A stretch of DNA of 64,000 bases from Guillardia theta CCMP2712 (GCF_000315625.1 NW_005434646.1:638534-702533), one strand, 5' to 3'. Shown: positions 7,849 through 15,160, counted from the stretch's first letter. Notes: a model not told the origin generated them from the letters alone. Made by a program: numbers and translations.

Positions 7849-9491
7849 ATGGCGATCTTGTCGAGGGGCATTCATCGCACCTACGAAGTTGGGAGAACTC
7901 TGGGAAAAGGGTCGTTTGCTACAGTGAAGGAAGGAAGACATAGAGACAAGGGCACACTCGTCGCTATCAAGATTGTCGACAAATGGATGAATTCTTTCCA
8001 TCAATCATCTCTGGAGCAGGAGATCCAGACTATGATGAAGGTTTCGCACCCTAACTGCCTCCGTCTGCACGAGGTGTACGACCAATGCGAGAAGACCTAC
8101 CTGATTCTTGATCTGGCAACCGGAGGAACCGTCATGGATCGCATCATTGCCCTGGACTTCTTCTCAGAGAAGCAGGCCGCAAAAGTGACAAGAGATGTCC
8201 TGAACGCGGTGGAATACCTGCACAACATCGGTATCACACACAGAGACCTGAAGCCAGAAAACCTACTCTATGCGTCCAACGATCCAGAATCCAAGTACTA
8301 TGATACAGTCAAGGTTGCTGACTTTGGACTCTCGAAATATATGGGTGAGAACGTTTCGATGAAGACTACCTGTGGCACCCCGAATTACATGGCGCCTGAA
8401 GTGTTGAATAGTGATGGTTTCGATGGTTATGGCCCTGAGGTGGACATCTGGTCAGTTGGAGTCATCATCTACACTATGTTGTGTGGCTTCCAGCCTTTTT
8501 TCGAGTTCTCAACAGCTGCATTGTTCCAACAGATTATGAAGGCTGAGTATTCATTCTTATCTCCTTATTGGGACCAAGTATCGAAAGAAGCGAAAGACCT
8601 CATTTCCAAGATGTTGGTTGTTGATCGATCAAAGAGACTTACAGCAATGCAGTGCTTGAATCACATTTGGTTCGATCAGGCGTACTCAAATGACTCGGTT
8701 GTGAGCACCTTGCATGGATCATTGCACACATTTTTGCTCGTTAGGAAACTTCCCATCTTTGACAACATCGACCCCAAGCTTCAGCAAGAAGTGATCAACA
8801 TGTTAAAGCCAAAGCAAGTTCCTTGGGGGGAGAAAGTCATCCAATCAGGAGAAGTTGCAGACTGTATGTACTTCATACAAAGTGGATCAGTATCTGTGAT
8901 GGTAGATGGGAATGAAATCGACCGTTTGGGTGCAGGTCAGATCATTTTTCTATCAAGGGGCTTTTTCTAACGAGTCTTTCTCCAGGCGACTTTTTTGGGG
9001 AAGTAGCTTTGACTGTCTCAGAACTTCGTACTGCCGACGTCATCTCGCTTGGAGCACAGTCAGGGACTCGCACAAACGTGGCGTCAAGCACAAGGAACCC
9101 TACCGAGCTTCTCCAATTCATGAGATCCGATTTCGAACAAATCTTGGCTAAGTTCCCCGTACTCCAGACAAGGATGCTTGAAGTCAGCCAGGTGACCGAG
9201 ATACCCTCGCGCATTGTCGCATGCTGACTTTTATCTCTTCAGAAACGTGTTCGTCGAGCCATCTCTTCGCGCAGGCCGTCAGAATCCCTAAGTCCATCAA
9301 ACCACAATCCATCAAGGACTGCGTCATCAGAGTCTGAGCATGTCTTCTCCGGCTCTTCCGATTGCTCGCCAGTGCTCTCTCCTGTTTCTGTTAGTCCCGT
9401 ATCCGCACCTGACCTCGAACTGGAAGCCATCAAATTCAAGAAAGGAAAGAGCAAGGTTTGGAAGAAAACCAAAGGATGCATCCAGCAATGA
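7849..9491 (+). CDS. CaMK1-like Ser/Thr kinase fused to a C-terminal cyclic-nucleotide-binding domain (paralogue 1); exons 7849-8935, 8986-9191, 9243-9491
   Basis: Kinase motifs GKGSFA, VAIK, HRDLKPEN, DFG, TTCGTPNYMAPE, DIWSVG. CNBD motifs MYFIQSGSVSV and GDFFGEVAL...RTADV. Ends KKGKSKVWKKTKGCIQQ*. Two GT-AG introns of 50 and 51 nt. Confidence 0.93.
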
Positions 9492-9720
9492 AGACAGTTC
9501 TTCTTTATATTTTTTTCTTAAGCTTTCTGCTTGTACATAATCTATTAACATTCTAGTGAATGAACATGAGTGAATGGGTGAATAGTCAGCACCAACTCTA
9601 CCTTCTCATATGACAGATCGTTAAATCAGCGAGCTGATTGAAAAGAATTTATTTTTGAGAGAAGGGATTCAAGAGTCCGCAACAGAAACCTTCGCCACGG
9701 AAGAATCAGAGGTTGTGTTC

Positions 9721-11095
9721 TTATGCAGCTTCCTGATTCATAGGATTTTCTGGAGACTTCTGCCACTGGCACACGCAAGAATGAGTGAGCAAGAACACGC
9801 AGTTTGCGCATCATGGAAACTCACGTTCTTGAAAATTATCTCCTTGATTTGAGAAAGCTTGAGGCCCGGATTTTCAGCCCTGATACCTGGAGCAGCGCTT
9901 CAGAGGAATCTTCACAAGTCAGCGAGCGATCAACGTGGGATCTCGCGCTCTTCGTACGCCTTGAATGCAGCCTTGCGTCTCCTCTCTGGGTGAGCATCCG
10001 ACTTCTCGTCCTGGGCACGTCGATTCAGCCAACAGGAAGCGAGGCGCTGATAGTCCTTCGCTCAGTTGGGGTCACCTCGGTGTTAAGGTTGGTGAGAAGG
10101 TCGGTCGCAGCATCGACACCAGATGCTTCCTTCCGCTGGATCCCCTTCTCTGCTAGCATGCGGGACTACAATTGTACACTCAAGATCGGCCGGAGGCTCG
10201 AGAGCAGGCACACCTCCTCCATCCTTAGGTGATTGATGTTTCGCTCGATCTCTGGCTCCTTGGAGGACAATCACTCCCAGCGGCAGAGAGCTGCGACTCA
10301 GCTCACCGGCTTCTTCTTCTCCTTCTTGGGAGGCATGAACATGAGGTTTTGTGCAATCTGCGCCTGTTGTACCGGGACGTTCAGTTGCTCTCGCAGACTC
10401 CAAGGGCAAAAGGTTTGTACCTGTGTGACCTTGGCGGGCTGAGTGGACTTCTTGTTGGACAGGGAGGCAGACTCCTCCTCCTACACGTGGGGCATGCCAG
10501 CATGAATGAACACAAGACAAGGAAATCCTATGACCTCAAGCTTCTTCCTCTCCTCCTTCCTACGGAGCTCCGCAAGGCGCTTTCCTCGGCGGCAGACTGC
10601 ATGCAAGGATCAGACTGCGCCCGATGGAAGGAGAGCCACATACTTGCTTGCTGCCGTCCTTGGATCCCTGCGACCAATAGGCATCCTCTTCTGCTCGGGC
10701 TGGCGCGCAAACGTCAGTGACATCGACTTTCAAAGGGGAGTTCATCAAGAGACAAGTGGTGTTCGTAACAAGCAGCAGGAGAAATGAGTTGAATGTGAAA
10801 GCTATGAAGTTTCGAAGATGGAGGAGACTTTCAGACGAGTGAACAGGACAGCGGGCTGCACGAGTGAGGTGGGTTGAGTCGGCAAAGAAGCAGGCAGAGA
10901 AGACTTGGGCGGAGAGGTCAGAGTTGGAGGGGATTAGGAGGAGGGAAGGAGAGCAAGGGAGGAGGAAGAGGGAAGGAGAGCAAGGGAGCAGGAAGAGGGA
11001 AGGAGAGCAAGGGAGCAGGAGGTCCCACATTTGGCCTCCTCGGCCTCAGCCTTCTTGTTGGCCTCCCTTGTCTTGGCGCCTTCCTTCTTGGGCAT
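9721..11095 (-). CDS. CCDC124: Coiled-coil domain-containing 124 / Lso2-like ribosome hibernation factor, multi-exon
   Basis: N-terminus MPKKEGAKTREANKKAE..EEDAYW. C-terminus HPERRRKAAFKAYEEREIP..ENPGLKLSQIKEIIFK.WQKSPENPMNQ, the hallmark CCDC124 tail. Confidence 0.88.
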
Positions 11096-11876
11096 CGTGT
11101 CGCACCCTATGGTCGGCCGCCGTGACGTGCCGGGCACACTGAGCCGGCCGAGCAACTGGGGCCCGGCAACCGCCACTGTGAGGGCCCCCGAGTCACTCTA
11201 AAGACTTCATATTGTCCTCGTACTGATTTTTGACTTAACTTTGAGTAAAGTGCTGACAGGTGACTACGCTCGGAGGTTGAATCCTCGTGATGATGATGAC
11301 TGCCTCGGATACCACCCCACCCACCAGCACAAAATTTGTAAGGTTTGTTGACCCCACCATCACTTCTGTACTTGCTGGTGTACCCATACAATTCATATTG
11401 AATAGTACCCGTTCTTGTACATAATCGGCTATACCCCCTTCGTACGGACCTTCAACACCTAACTACCCCTTGGGGTCGATACCTGCTTTTTGCGGATAGA
11501 AGTTAAAACACCCTACCCTCTAAAATCCGCTCACTCTGTACGGTAGGGTTATCTCTTTGACCACGCTTTACAAGACGAAAGATATTTGTTATGTTTGTTA
11601 GCTTAATCGGAGACTTTGAAATCTACACGTAAGATTTCAACACATGCCAAATAGTCTTCGAAAAGTTGCCATTTCGTTTTTTGAGAGTTTTTGACCGGAT
11701 GCATGCTGACGCCGCGGCCTGATGTCACTTGGGACATGAAGTGAAAAACTCTGTTTTCGAATACATTTTGGTATTTTGGTATCATTCATACCCCCTGTTT
11801 GCGAAAAAAAATTCTTTTCGGAATCTCGGCAAACCCGTAAATTCGGAAAGAGCACAGCGCAGGGCGGCAGAAAGCC

Positions 11877-12998
11877 ATGGTGAAATTAACGTACACAGGA
11901 GAGATTAGGACAAACTTCGACGTTGGAGAGACGATAGGAAGGGGATCGTTCGCAACTGTCAAACTTTGCACAGATGTCTTCACAAAGCAGCAGTTCGCAC
12001 TCAAGGTTGTAAGCAAAGATGACCCGGCGTTCGATGAGAAGAGCTTGGCCCATGAGGTCGACGCGATGATGAGAGTTTCGCACCCCAACTGCGTGCATTT
12101 ACACGGGGTCTTTGAAGAGAAGGGGAAATTTTTTCTGGTTCTGGACCTCGTTACTGGCGGGACACTGATGGATCGGATCATTGAGATGAATCACTTCTCG
12201 GAACAAGACGCGATTCACGTCACAAGGGACATCCTGGTCGCCGTCGAGTATCTGCATAGCATTGGTATCACGCATCGAGACCTGAAGCCTGAAAACTTGC
12301 TGTATGCTTCAGGAGACCCGGCGTCCCCGGACTACAATACCATCAAGATCGCGGACTTCGGGCTCGCCAAGGTCATGTCAGGAAGGAGCACGATGTCCAC
12401 TCCCTGCGGCACCCCCAACTACGTGGCGCCGGAGGTGATCGACCCCGCGAGAGGCTCCAAGGTCTACGGGCCGGAGGTTGACATCTGGTCGCTGGGTGTC
12501 ATCGTGTATGTCATGCTCTGCGGCTTCCCTCCGTTCTACCAGACCTCAACGCCCGCCCTGTTCAAGGAGATCTGCAAGGGCGAGTTCGGCTTCCCCTCTC
12601 CCTATTGGGATGGGATATCTTCGCAGGCGAGGGCCTTCATCCTCAAGACGATCGTGAAGCAGCCCAAGAAGAGGATGACGGCGTCTGAGTGCCTTGAGCA
12701 CCAGTGGATCAAGAGCGGATCGCCAGACGTGCGAGCTGGGAGCCTGCACAGCTTCCACAAGGCTTTCCTCCTCCTGCGCAAGCTGGATATCTTCGAGAGC
12801 ATCGACCCCATGCTGCTGCATGAGATCGCCAAAGTGCTCAAGACCGTCAGAGTTCGAGAGGGGGACTACATCATCCGAGCAGGCGACCAGGCCAACAGCA
12901 TGTACTTCGTGCACTCGGGCTACGTGCAGGTCTCTGTGAATGGAAGCAAAGTCGACATGCTCACTTCAGGTATCATCACTGAGATGACGAAGATGGGA

Positions 12999-13059
<61 letters not shown>

Positions 13060-13506
13060 CGATGTTCATGATGACGATGACGATTGTGATACTGGTTGGT
13101 CCTGACCTGCTCTGCAGGAGACTTTTTCGGGGAAGTTGCCCTCACGGTAGCAGCACACCGGACAGCAGACGTGATGGCCCTGGGTCCGATGCACAAGGAG
13201 CACGAGAGAGGGTCAGAGCACGTCACCGAGCTGTTCGAGCTCATGAAGAGCGATCTGGAGGAAATCGTCCGCACGTACCCCCTGCTGGAATCTCGTCTCG
13301 AGCGTGTCGGGAAGGCTCGGTTCAGGAGGGCTTCCTGTAGCTCAAGTCCGGAGCGAAAGGATACCGTCGATTGTCACAACGCTCCTCCGTCTCCTCGCCG
13401 GTCATATCGGAAGCTCTCGGACGTTGCGAGGAGAAATAGTGTGGATGGCCTCGAAAACTTGAAGAAGATCAAATCCAGGCGATGGAAAGCTTGCGTCCAG
13501 CAGTGA
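11877..13506 (+). CDS. CaMK1-like kinase fused to a C-terminal CNBD (paralogue 2); exons 11877-12969 and 13118-13506
   Basis: Kinase motifs GRGSFA, ALK, HRDLKPEN, DFG, STPCGTPNYVAPE. CNBD motifs MYFVHSGYVQV and GDFFGEVAL..HRTADV. Ends KKIKSRRWKACVQQ*. The poly-Met in the ORF track lies in the intron. Confidence 0.93.
12999..13060. repeat. (ATG)n microsatellite inside the intron of kinase 2
   Basis: Directly visible, within GT-AG intron 12970-13117. Confidence 0.9.
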
Positions 13507-13789: not shown

Positions 13790-15160
13790 TCAGATGTACT
13801 CCAGTCGATCGAGGGAGAGCCGTTCACCTCTCTCCGTCATGGCCTCGCTGATCCAGGATTCCGATGAGGGTGATCTCGTCACGTGCTTGCAGCGAAGCTG
13901 AGCCGATCGCATCCTCGCCACCAGCCTCTTCCACCACACGGGCTCACGCGCCTCCATCGCCTCCACGTCGGCTGCTCTCATGCAGTACACCTCCATCGCC
14001 TCGGCTGTCGTCTCCTCGTTGACATAGCTCACTCCGTTTGCAACAATCTGGATCCTCGAGCGCTCGTCCACCTGGTGGTCCAGCAGCCCAAACATGCAGC
14101 CTGCAAGACAGGAGTCAGCACAGGTAGAGGACGGGGCGAGCAGGTTCCCACCTGTCGACAGCGTCTGCGTCTCGACGCCGTCCACGATCACCCTCACATT
14201 TCCGGAGCCCACCAGGAACAGATTTCTCCGCAGCTCCCACCCCTCTGCGATCACCTCCCCGCTCACTGGGCTCATCAGCTCGAACCTGCCTGTCATGTCC
14301 TTGAGCTTCTCGCAAGCCGGGTCGTCAACGATGTCCATCTTGCAGAGCAGCTGGAACGCCTTATGGGCAGTGTGACTGTCCCCGTGGGGATGGCAGTTTA
14401 TGTTGGACCTCATCTTCATCATCCATGGATGCGACAAGCAGCGAGCGGCGTCGGGGCGTTTCCTGGAGTCGGGCTCCAGCATCCTTGCGACAAGATCTGC
14501 CGCGTCCTCTTGACCCTTGCTATCACCCTTGGACCTCGGCCTGAGCAGGCCTGCGATCGGACTACGGAGCAACTGGGCAATTCTCCCCCTCGGATTGCTC
14601 GTCTCATGCGAATTTGCCTTCAGCAGGCGATGCAAGATCCTCCCAGCCATGGCTATGTCTTGCGCAGCTACTGACAGCCCCTCTGCGGAAGAGATCTCTT
14701 CGATCAGGTAGGAGCTCCCGAACCCTACGATCTTGACTGTGTCATCGCAAGAGACGATGACGTGCTCCTCCACTAGATTTCCGTGAACGATCCCATTCTC
14801 GTGCATGTGGTTGAGCGCGTCCAGGATTTGTGACATGATACCTGCAATCCTTGCCTCCGAGAATGCTGCCTGATAAGAGATCTCATCCGCCAGCGTTGCT
14901 CCTTCCACGAGGTCCATCACAAGATAAAGATCCTTGTGCTCCTCGTACACCTCGTGCAGCTGGACGCAGTTTGCGTGAGACAGTCGCATCAAACTCCTTA
15001 TCTCCGAATTTAGCGACCTCCCCTCCTTCTTGATCACCTTTACGGCATACTTGTCGCCGCATCCCCTGTGCGTTGCCTCCATCATTGCGCATCTCGCTCC
15101 GCTCCTCATCTTCCTGTTCAGCTCGTAGTGCCTCCCAAACTCCTTCGACAGGATCGCCAT
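13790..15160 (-). CDS. Pseudokinase paralogue (CaMK fold) with degenerate CNBD; 51-nt in-frame intron ~14101-14151
   Basis: N-terminus MAILSKEFGRHYEL parallels kinase 1 MAILSRGIHRTYEV. It keeps YAVK and LSHANCVQLHEVYE, but HRDLKPEN becomes HGNLVEEH, DFG becomes GFG and APE is absent. CNBD remnant LFLVGSGNVRV..GCMFG. Confidence 0.85.
   Translation of the reverse strand: MAILSKEFGRHYELNRKMRSGARCAMMEATHRGCGDKYAVKVIKKEGRSLNSEIRSLMRLSHANCVQLHEVYEEHKDLYLVMDLVEGATLADEISYQAAFSEARIAGIMSQILDALNHMHENGIVHGNLVEEHVIVSCDDTVKIVGFGSSYLIEEISSAEGLSVAAQDIAMAGRILHRLLKANSHETSNPRGRIAQLLRSPIAGLLRPRSKGDSKGQEDAADLVARMLEPDSRKRPDAARCLSHPWMMKMRSNINCHPHGDSHTAHKAFQLLCKMDIVDDPACEKLKDMTGRFELMSPVSGEVIAEGWELRRNLFLVGSGNVRVIVDGVETQTLSTGGNLLAPSSTCADSCLAGCMFGLLDHQVDERSRIQIVANGVSYVNEETTAEAMEVYCMRAADVEAMEAREPVWWKRLVARMRSAQLRCKHVTRSPSSESWISEAMTERGERLSLDRLEYI

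What the first reader, a model, noticed from the sequence alone, without database searches (positions are those of the whole stretch)
9420..13506. Both active kinase-CNBD paralogues end in polybasic + C-x-Q-Q tails (CaaX-like membrane anchor, or displaced CaM-binding helix)
Seen, but hidden from the ORF track for kinase 1: the tails are KFKKGKSKVWKKTKG-CIQQ* and KKIKSRRWKA-CVQQ*, conserved although the preceding Ser-rich linkers are unalignable. Known: a terminal Cys-a-a-X plus upstream lysines is the K-Ras-type membrane signal, and X=Q is accepted by farnesyltransferase, though Q at a2 is non-classical. The KSxxWK element also recalls the CaMK1 calmodulin-binding helix (KSKWKQA). Inference: membrane-tethered cNMP sensors, possibly with residual CaM input, as if the CNBD inserted between the kinase and its CaM-binding tail.
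Basis: partly seen in the sequence, partly recalled or inferred. Interest (0 to 1): 0.7.

Follow-up and report, generated by a model that had tools for sequence, protein, structure and literature searches.

The report
Farnesylation-type tails on algal cNMP kinases
Two neighbouring kinase genes of the alga Guillardia theta end in a lysine-rich stretch followed by Cys-x-Gln-Gln, a tail kept across cryptophyte relatives that most likely receives a farnesyl lipid and tethers these cyclic-nucleotide-sensing kinases to a membrane.

Summary
The window is Guillardia theta nuclear DNA. Public transcript-derived proteins match both spliced models exactly.

The membrane-anchor reading is well supported, though lipidation itself is untested.
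- Among 64 cryptophyte kinase+CNBD cluster representatives, Cys sits exactly at -4 in 21. No other position among the last 12 exceeds 4, and 0 of 98 CNBD-less CaMK-like relatives have it.
- The last residue is always Q, S or M, the farnesyltransferase type. Residue a2 is never D, E, K or R.
- On a tree built without the tails, the box occurs in several deep clades.
- CKQQ is a proven farnesylation box (LKB1, NAP1L1, Pex19), and yeast data accept Q at a2 and favour Q at X.
- G. theta has a farnesyltransferase beta gene, and its NAP1 locus holds a downstream open frame ending CKQQ.
- AlphaFold gives the last ~53 residues of kinase 2 pLDDT below 50.

The displaced calmodulin-helix idea is not supported: the Trp is not conserved, too few residues follow it, and no similarity or consistent helical amphipathicity was found.

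Verdict: a new member of a known kind of signal, on an uncharacterised kinase family.

The parts
7849..8935 (+). Kinase 1 exon 1: CaMK1-type kinase domain and first half of the CNBD
   Evidence: Pfam Pkinase E = 4.6e-74 and cNMP_binding. Identical to P0125 residues 1-362.
8986..9191 (+). Kinase 1 exon 2: second half of the CNBD (phosphate-binding cassette FGEVAL...RTAD) and C-helix. It follows the 50-nt GT-AG intron 8936..8985.
   Evidence: Sequence. Matches P0125.
9192..9242 (+). Kinase 1 intron 2 (51 nt, GT-AG, in-frame stop), at the boundary between CNBD and linker. It is retained in transcript P0124, which would give a tail-less protein.
9243..9491 (+). Kinase 1 exon 3: RVRRAIS motif, Ser/Pro-rich linker, polybasic stretch, CIQQ and stop
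   Evidence: Translation. Identical to the end of P0125. The Hanusia phi orthologue P0026 also ends KGCIQQ.
9432..9476 (+). Kinase 1 polybasic stretch KFKKGKSKVWKKTKG (9 Lys in 15 residues)
9477..9488 (+). Kinase 1 CaaX-type box CIQQ (stop at 9489..9491)
11877..12969 (+). Kinase 2 exon 1: kinase domain and first half of the CNBD
   Evidence: Pfam Pkinase E = 4e-72 and cNMP_binding 29.1 bits. Identical to P0123.
12970..13117 (+). Kinase 2 intron (148 nt, GT-AG) with an (ATG)n microsatellite that reads as poly-Met in the ORF table
   Evidence: It is spliced out in transcript P0123.
13118..13506 (+). Kinase 2 exon 2: second half of the CNBD, RFRRAS motif, linker, polybasic stretch, CVQQ and stop
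   Evidence: AlphaFold gives residues 441-493 pLDDT below 50.
13462..13491 (+). Kinase 2 polybasic stretch KKIKSRRWKA (6 Lys/Arg in 10 residues)
13492..13503 (+). Kinase 2 CaaX-type box CVQQ (stop at 13504..13506)
13790..15160 (-). Third paralogue, a degenerate kinase + CNBD (HGN for HRD, GFG for DFG). It ends ...DRLEYI* with no polybasic stretch and no Cys at -4, and serves as the contrast case.
   Evidence: ORF translation. Pfam Pkinase match is only partial.

Best explanation
Each tail is a farnesyltransferase (CaaX-type) signal preceded by a polybasic stretch, at the end of a disordered Ser/Pro-rich linker. Inferred mechanism: cytosolic farnesyltransferase puts a C15 farnesyl on the Cys at -4. 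The lipid plus 6-9 nearby Lys/Arg then hold the kinase + CNBD module on the inner face of an acidic membrane (plasma or flagellar membrane, by analogy with K-Ras4B and LKB1), so a cAMP/cGMP rise is read out next to membrane substrates. Shown: the sequences, their splicing and expression, family-wide conservation of the Cys position and of the residue types allowed at a2 and X, predicted disorder of the tail, and the enzyme gene in the genome. Inferred: lipidation itself, which membrane, and whether the last three residues are then cleaved and the Cys methylated. A conserved Ser/Thr inside the basic stretch (K-[S/T]-K-x-C) could allow phosphorylation-driven release, as at K-Ras4B Ser181; that part is speculative.
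For: 1. Both tails are real and expressed: stored transcript-derived proteins are identical to the spliced models.
2. Cys is at -4 in 21 of 64 family representatives, at most 4 at any other of the last 12 positions, and 0 of 98 CNBD-less CaMK-like hits.
3. X is Q (11), S (9) or M (1), never L or F. Residue a2 is Q (16), V (3), C (1) or H (1), never D/E/K/R. No K/P/R occurs at X although the context is Lys-rich. These are the rules of the yeast all-CXXX screen (PMC10320760).
4. On a tree of kinase + CNBD with tails removed, the box occurs in the slow 'core' orthologue group (CVQS, CTQS, CSQQ, CHQQ, CNQQ, CKQQ), the kinase 1 clade (CIQQ), the kinase 2 clade (CVQQ, CSHQ) and two further deep clades (CRVS/CAVM, CVVS). 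Named sources are Guillardia, Hanusia, Rhodomonas, Teleaulax and Cryptomonas.
5. Precedent: CKQQ is 100% farnesylated on the yeast reporter and in LKB1/STK11, NAP1L1 and Pex19. Endogenous LKB1 is almost fully farnesylated, and the Cys-to-Ser knock-in loses membrane association (PMC3898322). The CxQQ neighbours readable in the truncated supplement (CAQQ, CCQQ, CDQQ, CEQQ, CFQQ) score 3.7-4.9 against a cut-off of 3.
6. Pathway in G. theta: a farnesyltransferase-beta-type exon best matches PDB FTase beta chains at E = 2e-18, against 2.5e-7 for the Rab enzyme. There is an alpha-subunit repeat and Rce1-like genes. The NAP1 locus has a downstream open frame ending EECKQQ*, and the Pex19 locus one ending CNIM*.
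7. AlphaFold gives pLDDT below 50 for residues 441-493 of kinase 2. This fits the roughly 11-residue flexible hydrophilic linker that PrePS requires (PMC1175975).
8. Three other family members end in a hydrophobic 19-residue stretch (Kyte-Doolittle 2.0-2.3) that looks like a tail anchor, suggesting C-terminal membrane attachment is a family theme.
Against: There is no biochemical evidence for any cryptophyte protein, and the specificity of cryptophyte farnesyltransferase is unknown. Q at a2 is outside the classical aliphatic rule. The exact yeast scores for CIQQ and CVQQ could not be read because the supplement is truncated in the library. About two thirds of family representatives lack Cys at -4: some are truncated or intron-retaining models, others truly end differently, so the anchor is not obligatory. 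The counts are not phylogenetically independent. A clear isoprenylcysteine methyltransferase was not found: the Pfam ICMT search was blank, and one PEMT-superfamily exon scores 26.3 bits against a cut-off of 24. Farnesylated CKQQ proteins such as NAP1 are not membrane-bound, so farnesylation would not by itself prove a membrane anchor.
Confidence: 0.72

Rival explanations
1. The tail is a calmodulin-binding helix displaced from its usual place after the kinase domain by insertion of the CNBD.
For: KSKVWKK and KSRRWKA superficially resemble the start of the CaMK1 calmodulin-binding segment. The kinase domain is CaMK1-like: its best PDB hits are CaMK1, CaMK4 and CaMK1D. Kinase 1's tail has a marginal helical moment, with 6.8% of shuffles as high.
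Against: Trp occurs in 5 of the 21 CaaX tails and is absent from most core orthologues. Only 6 or 9 residues follow the Trp, too few for a second hydrophobic anchor. Gly and Ser interrupt the stretch. AlphaFold shows pLDDT below 50 and only a 5-residue helix. Kinase 2's tail has a helical moment below the shuffle mean. The tails find no PDB chain at E <= 10. They give no BLASTP alignment at E <= 100 to the post-kinase regulatory segment of the nearest CNBD-less cryptophyte kinase. This reading also does not explain the fixed distance of the Cys from the C-terminus.
Confidence: 0.05
2. The Cys is farnesylated, but the lipid serves protein-protein contacts or nuclear/cytosolic functions, as in NAP1 or the Ydj1-type 'shunted' CaaX proteins, and the Lys-rich stretch acts as a nuclear localisation signal or nucleic-acid binder rather than a membrane signal.
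For: CKQQ proteins include non-membrane proteins (NAP1L1, Pex19, Ydj1-type reporters), and such boxes may escape cleavage and methylation. K-rich runs resemble classical nuclear localisation signals. No clear ICMT was found.
Against: A polybasic stretch directly abutting the farnesyl-Cys is the K-Ras4B/LKB1 membrane arrangement, and LKB1 loses membrane association without its Cys. Sister family members carry hydrophobic tail-anchor-like C-termini in the same position, which points to membranes. In the yeast Ras-based scores, which depend on full processing, CAQQ, CFQQ and CCQQ score 4.1-5.5, so CxQQ with a non-charged a1 may well be fully processed.
Confidence: 0.12
3. The conserved Cys is S-acylated (palmitoylated) or has another role such as redox or metal binding, and is not prenylated.
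For: Cys next to basic residues near a terminus can be palmitoylated. Three family members have Cys at -5 rather than -4.
Against: Palmitoylation does not require a fixed distance from the C-terminus or a restricted last residue. Here Cys is at -4 in 21 sequences, with X limited to Q, S or M. Palmitoylation of a soluble protein usually needs a prior membrane signal.
Confidence: 0.07
4. The shared ending is a neutral leftover of common descent with no function.
For: The two genes are paralogues, so sharing a tail is not two independent events.
Against: The linkers have diverged beyond alignment (E = 0.12) while the box and the basic stretch persist across clades separated by 0.5-1.5 changes per site. 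The degenerate third paralogue has lost the tail.
Confidence: 0.03

Closest known systems
LKB1/STK11 C-terminal tail (…KIRRLSACKQQ)
   Same: It is a Ser/Thr kinase ending in C-x-Q-Q with basic residues and a phosphorylatable Ser just upstream. The Cys is farnesylated in vivo and promotes membrane association (PMC3898322; PMC10320760). A paper title found (PMC5490199, not read) states that LKB1 binds membranes through phosphatidic acid.
   Different: There is no homology of the tails, which arose by convergence or independent acquisition. LKB1 has a1 = K, whereas these tails have I or V. LKB1 has no CNBD, and its kinase belongs to a different branch from the CaMK1-like domain here.
K-Ras4B hypervariable region (polybasic stretch + CVIM)
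   Same: A Lys run abuts a farnesylated Cys with no second Cys for palmitoylation. The core orthologues' ...GKKKDKSKMC closely mimics ...KKKKKKSKTKC, including a Ser near the Cys (the K-Ras4B sequence, the Ser181 switch and calmodulin binding of the farnesylated tail are from my own knowledge).
   Different: The box is non-canonical (Q at a2) rather than aliphatic. The cargo is a kinase, not a GTPase. Processing after farnesylation is unknown.
NAP1/NAP1L1 and Pex19 CKQQ boxes
   Same: These are proven farnesylated C-x-Q-Q endings. G. theta's own NAP1 locus has a downstream open frame ending CKQQ.
   Different: They have acidic or neutral upstream context and do not act as plasma-membrane anchors.
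Lipid-anchored cGMP-dependent kinases (mammalian PKG II; apicomplexan PKG isoform I) and farnesylated rhodopsin kinase GRK1
   Same: PKG II and apicomplexan PKG are cyclic-nucleotide-regulated kinases, and GRK1 is a signalling kinase; in all of them the site of action is set by a covalent lipid (own knowledge, not tested here).
   Different: PKGs are AGC kinases with N-terminal CNBDs and N-terminal acylation. Here a CaMK-type kinase carries one C-terminal CNBD and a C-terminal prenylation box.
CaMK1 autoinhibitory / calmodulin-binding helix
   Same: The kinase domain is CaMK1-like, and there is a short K-S-x-x-W-K resemblance.
   Different: Position, length, conservation, predicted structure and sequence similarity all fail.

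Membership tests
CaaX-box substrates of protein farnesyltransferase | Cys exactly four residues from the C-terminus of the expressed protein | tested here: met
   CIQQ* and CVQQ* appear in the genome and in transcript-derived proteins P0125 and P0123.
CaaX-box substrates of protein farnesyltransferase | Last residue of the farnesyltransferase type (S, M, Q, A, C) rather than L/F (geranylgeranyltransferase-I type) | tested here: met
   X = Q in both genes. Across 21 family tails X is Q (11), S (9) or M (1). Q at X is a positive pattern in the yeast screen.
CaaX-box substrates of protein farnesyltransferase | Classical rule: aliphatic residue at a2 | tested here: not met
   a2 = Q. The updated rule is met, since only D/E/K/R at a2 are restrictive, and CKQQ is a proven substrate.
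CaaX-box substrates of protein farnesyltransferase | Flexible, hydrophilic linker of about 11 residues before the Cys (PrePS) | tested here: met
   The PrePS requirement is read. The tails are rich in K, S, G and T. AlphaFold pLDDT is below 50 for residues 441-493 of kinase 2.
CaaX-box substrates of protein farnesyltransferase | Conservation of the Cys position in orthologues | tested here: met
   21 of 64 family representatives in several deep clades and five named genera, against 0 of 98 CNBD-less relatives.
CaaX-box substrates of protein farnesyltransferase | The organism encodes farnesyltransferase | tested here: met
   A beta-subunit exon at G000:C53 best matches PDB farnesyltransferase beta chains, E = 2e-18. 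One alpha-subunit repeat lies at C52. The full gene models were not built.
CaaX-box substrates of protein farnesyltransferase | Covalent farnesyl on the Cys | not testable with these tools
   This needs labelling, mass spectrometry or an enzyme assay.
K-Ras4B-type polybasic + farnesyl plasma-membrane signal | Cluster of Lys/Arg directly upstream of the prenyl-Cys, with no nearby second Cys | tested here: met
   6 Lys/Arg in the 12 residues before the Cys in both genes, and net charge +5/+6 over 20 residues. No other Cys lies within 40 residues upstream of the box.
K-Ras4B-type polybasic + farnesyl plasma-membrane signal | Removal of the last three residues and carboxyl-methylation | tested here: inconclusive
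   Rce1-like genes are present. The Pfam ICMT search was blank. One PEMT-superfamily exon is just over the ICMT cut-off at 26.3 against 24 bits.
CaMK1-type calmodulin-binding autoregulatory helix | Basic amphipathic helix of about 18-20 residues with a Trp anchor and a second hydrophobic anchor about 13 residues on | tested here: not met
   Only 6 or 9 residues follow the Trp. Kinase 2's tail moment is 0.20 against a shuffle mean of 0.31. AlphaFold gives only a 5-residue helix at pLDDT below 50.
CaMK1-type calmodulin-binding autoregulatory helix | Sequence similarity to known calmodulin-binding segments, and conservation of the Trp | tested here: not met
   No PDB match at E <= 10. No alignment to the regulatory segment of CNBD-less relative P0042. 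Trp is present in 5 of the 21 CaaX tails.
CaMK1-type calmodulin-binding autoregulatory helix | Ca2+-dependent calmodulin binding | not testable with these tools
   This needs a pull-down or a titration.

The most novel reading that the evidence does not exclude
Membrane tethering by the C-terminus may be the invariant property of a cryptophyte-specific class of CaMK-type cyclic-nucleotide-dependent kinases, met in different paralogues by interchangeable devices: a polybasic farnesylation box, a transmembrane tail anchor, or basic-hydrophobic endings. In the farnesylated members the tether may be switchable in two ways. The conserved Ser/Thr in K-[S/T]-K-x-C could be phosphorylated, giving a farnesyl-electrostatic switch possibly driven by the kinase's own cNMP-activated activity. 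Alternatively, retention of the conserved intron at the CNBD/linker boundary yields a tail-less soluble isoform.
Probability: 0.2. Interest if true: 0.7.

Novelty: new member of a known kind. Interest (0 to 1): 0.45.

Why it matters
The kinase + CNBD proteins of cryptophytes are uncharacterised; databases name them 'cGMP-dependent protein kinase' or 'CaMK I' automatically. A conserved farnesylation-type tail says where they probably act, at a membrane next to cyclases, channels or flagellar machinery. It also gives a cheap handle for testing this: Cys-to-Ser mutants, farnesyltransferase inhibitors and GFP-tail reporters. The tails add natural, evolutionarily conserved C-x-Q-[Q/S] boxes with aliphatic, polar or basic a1 residues to the short list of non-canonical farnesylation motifs known from LKB1, NAP1 and Pex19. 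The work also corrects a truncated public gene model for kinase 2.

Tried and rejected
- **RNA reads:** Transcript-derived database proteins served instead.
- **Yeast scores for CIQQ, CVQQ, CSQQ and CVQS:** the supplements of PMC10320760 are truncated alphabetically, and PMC9231725 holds none of them. Only CxQQ neighbours with a1 = A, C, D, E or F could be read.
- **Full-text search for these four boxes:** nothing relevant was found.
- **Region-restricted word search with the CNBD + tail:** few hits. The profile search worked better.
- **'Amphipathic helix' reading of the ...MFKS endings:** dropped, because their helical moments are no higher than shuffles.
- **G. theta paralogue of the CSHQ protein (L003):** the genome reads GWCSGCLL... 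past that point, so I do not count it.
- **G. theta versus Hanusia identity, tail against linker (84% against 72%):** too close a pair to be informative.
- **Isoprenylcysteine methyltransferase:** inconclusive.
- **Not used:** the large HMM search (costly, and no claim here rests on absence of relatives) and a complex prediction with calmodulin (I do not claim binding).

Full report
**What is there.** The window is nuclear DNA of the cryptophyte alga Guillardia theta (G000 contig C28). Stored NCBI proteins of strain CCMP2712 match it exactly.

Between 7849 and 15160 lie three paralogous genes. Each combines a CaMK1-type kinase domain with one C-terminal cyclic-nucleotide-binding domain (CNBD). 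Pfam gives Pkinase E = 4.6e-74 for kinase 1 and 4e-72 for kinase 2, plus cNMP_binding. The best solved relatives of the kinase domain are CaMK1, CaMK4 and CaMK1D.

**Gene models and the observation.**
- Kinase 1 is 7849..8935 / 8986..9191 / 9243..9491. Its GT-AG introns are 50 and 51 nt long.
- Its last exon encodes a Ser/Pro-rich linker and ends KFKKGKSKVWKKTKGCIQQ*.
- Kinase 2 is 11877..12969 / 13118..13506. Its 148-nt intron carries an (ATG)n microsatellite that reads as poly-Met. The protein ends KKIKSRRWKACVQQ*.
Stored public proteins are identical to the two spliced models instead.
- P0125 (513 aa) is XP_005833974.1 and also an MMETSP transcript. P0123 (493 aa) is an MMETSP G. theta transcript, UniRef A0A7S4JP04. 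The last exons are therefore expressed as read.
- The two proteins are 47% identical overall. Linker plus tail alone align only at E = 0.12, through an RxRRA motif and the tail.

- A word search with kinase 2 and a profile search with 25 full-length members found 64 cluster representatives that carry both domains. Those that a source names are nearly all cryptophytes.
- Cys is exactly at -4 in 21 of them. No other position among the last 12 exceeds 4. None of 98 CNBD-less CaMK-like hits has it. Fisher p = 3e-10, but this is not corrected for shared descent.
- The boxes are CVQS, CTQS, CSQQ, CHQQ, CNQQ, CKQQ, CIQQ, CVQQ, CSHQ, CVCS, CRVS, CAVM and CVVS.
- The last residue is Q (11), S (9) or M (1), never L or F.
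- Residue a2 is never D/E/K/R, and X is never K/P/R, although the upstream context is up to 60% Lys.
- Named sources include Guillardia, Hanusia, Rhodomonas, Teleaulax and Cryptomonas.
- G. theta itself has a further copy elsewhere, XP_005833132.1, which ends KKKKACSQQ.
- On a maximum-likelihood tree of kinase + CNBD with linkers and tails cut off, the box is found in five places. These are the slowly evolving core orthologue group, the kinase 1 clade, the kinase 2 clade and two further deep clades.
- The simplest reading is an ancestral tail kept under selection and lost or replaced several times. The root and the direction of change were not tested.
- Most tails also share K-[S/T]-K-x-C just before the box.

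**Is C-x-Q-Q a credible farnesylation box?**
- The all-CXXX yeast screen of Kim et al. [quoted passage not shown] It measured 100% modification of CKQQ on the Ydj1 reporter.
- Its rules are restrictive rather than prescriptive. D/E/K/R at a2 and K/P/R at X block modification, and Q at X is a positive pattern. All 21 tails obey these rules.
- The stored supplement is truncated before CI.. and CV.. The readable neighbours CAQQ, CCQQ, CDQQ, CEQQ and CFQQ score 3.7-4.9 on the Ydj1 scale, where the cut-off is 3.
- CAQQ, CCQQ and CFQQ also score 4.1-5.5 on the Ras-based scale, which depends on full processing.
- The PrePS paper (PMC1175975) lists LKB1's CKQQ as the known exception with Q at a2. It also defines an ~11-residue flexible hydrophilic linker as part of the motif.
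- Houde et al. 2014 (PMC3898322) showed that nearly all endogenous LKB1 is farnesylated. The Cys433Ser knock-in loses membrane association.

**Is the pathway present in G. theta?**
- Three prenyltransferase-beta loci exist.
- An exon at contig C53 best matches solved farnesyltransferase beta chains (E = 2e-18, against 2.5e-7 for the Rab enzyme). The locus at C9 best matches Rab geranylgeranyltransferase beta.
- An alpha-subunit repeat and Rce1-like genes are present. A clear isoprenylcysteine methyltransferase was not found.
- As an internal control, the NAP1 locus has an open frame just downstream of the NAP domain that ends EECKQQ*. An open frame downstream of the Pex19-domain match ends CNIM*. 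I did not confirm either as a spliced exon.
- If the NAP1 frame is the gene's last exon, conserved substrates of the enzyme keep their boxes in this species, including a C-x-Q-Q one.

**Structure.** AlphaFold2 of kinase 2, run with the family alignment, gives mean pLDDT 79 and pTM 0.76. The kinase and CNBD fold well. Residues 441-493 have pLDDT below 50, apart from a 5-residue helix at 486-490. This suits an accessible lipidation signal on a flexible tether.

**The calmodulin reading.** It fails every test I could run.
- The Trp is not conserved, and only 6-9 residues follow it.
- The tails match no PDB chain at E <= 10.
- They give no alignment at E <= 100 to the post-kinase regulatory segment of the closest CNBD-less cryptophyte kinase.
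- Kinase 2's tail has a helical hydrophobic moment below the shuffle mean, and kinase 1's is marginal.
- Calmodulin binding to the farnesylated polybasic tail, as described for K-Ras4B (own knowledge), cannot be excluded. It would be a consequence of the anchor, not a displaced CaMK helix.

**Wider pattern.**
- Three family members (one from Hanusia) end in a hydrophobic 19-residue stretch (Kyte-Doolittle 2.0-2.3) that looks like a tail anchor.
- Others end in Lys-plus-hydrophobic motifs (...GKLSNMFKS) or have Cys at -5. I do not call these amphipathic helices, because their moments do not exceed shuffles.
- The degenerate third paralogue in the window (HGN for HRD, GFG for DFG) has neither a basic stretch nor the Cys.

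**Verdict.**
- The CaaX-type anchor reading is well supported by comparative and literature evidence. I put about 0.7 on in vivo farnesylation with a membrane role.
- The calmodulin reading is not supported.
- This is a new member of a known kind of signal, the LKB1/K-Ras4B type, on an uncharacterised algal kinase family. It is useful and testable but not very surprising.
- Lipidation itself, the target membrane and any switch remain to be shown.

Noticed in passing
window 11877..13506: The NCBI gene model for kinase 2 (GUITHDRAFT_157702, P0121, 294 aa) stops inside the gene and lacks the CNBD and the tail. The MMETSP transcript protein P0123 (493 aa) gives the full product. The core orthologue elsewhere in the genome is likewise split into two NCBI models (GUITHDRAFT_157803 and 159653).
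   Followed up: yes
window 9192..9242: Intron 2 of kinase 1 lies exactly at the CNBD/linker boundary and is retained in an MMETSP transcript (P0124, ending ...IVAC*), which would give a tail-less protein. Contig-derived proteins of the core orthologue (P0150, P0115, P0187) also read into non-homologous sequence right after the equivalent point (...QIGQ). This may be regulated or may be unspliced noise.
   Followed up: partly
window 9246..9266 and 13318..13335: A conserved R-[V/F]-[R/K]-R-A-[S/A/I] motif lies at the end of, or just after, the CNBD C-helix across the family. With Ser it is a Kemptide-like RRAS site, and with Ala it resembles a pseudosubstrate. It is a candidate autoinhibitory element placed after the CNBD.
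   Followed up: no
window 12990..13080: An (ATG)n microsatellite inside the kinase 2 intron reads as poly-Met in the ORF table. A 98%-identical ENA variant (P0001) reads through a different version of this intron, so the intron sequence appears to differ between sources.
   Followed up: no
window 13790..15160 (- strand): The third paralogue is doubly degenerate. HGN replaces HRD, GFG replaces DFG, and the Arg of the CNBD phosphate-binding cassette appears to be lost. It also lacks the polybasic stretch and the Cys at -4.
   Followed up: partly
window 7849..7869; alignment A1 columns 69-76: Most cryptophyte orthologues start MGILSKG, while kinase 1 and the pseudokinase start MAILS (Gly2 replaced by Ala). 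Whether the Gly is N-myristoylated is unclear, because the residue at position 6 is Lys, which is atypical.
   Followed up: no
L019:2300-2442 (G000:C28, Cys codon at 342436); L023:2049-2201: An open frame just downstream of the G. theta NAP1 domain ends EECKQQ*, the conserved farnesylation box of NAP1. An open frame downstream of the Pex19-domain match ends CNIM*. Neither was confirmed as a spliced exon.
   Followed up: partly
proteins P0025, P0175, P0176: These kinase + CNBD family members have a strongly hydrophobic C-terminal stretch (Kyte-Doolittle 2.0-2.3 over 19 residues), which looks like a transmembrane tail anchor in place of the CaaX box.
   Followed up: partly
L003:2030-2120 (G000:C13): The G. 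theta paralogue of the CSHQ-ending protein P0017 reads GWCSGCLLILVAPTFLSPVF* in the genome instead of GWCSHQ*. It may have a different ending or an unrecognised splice; this is unresolved.
   Followed up: partly
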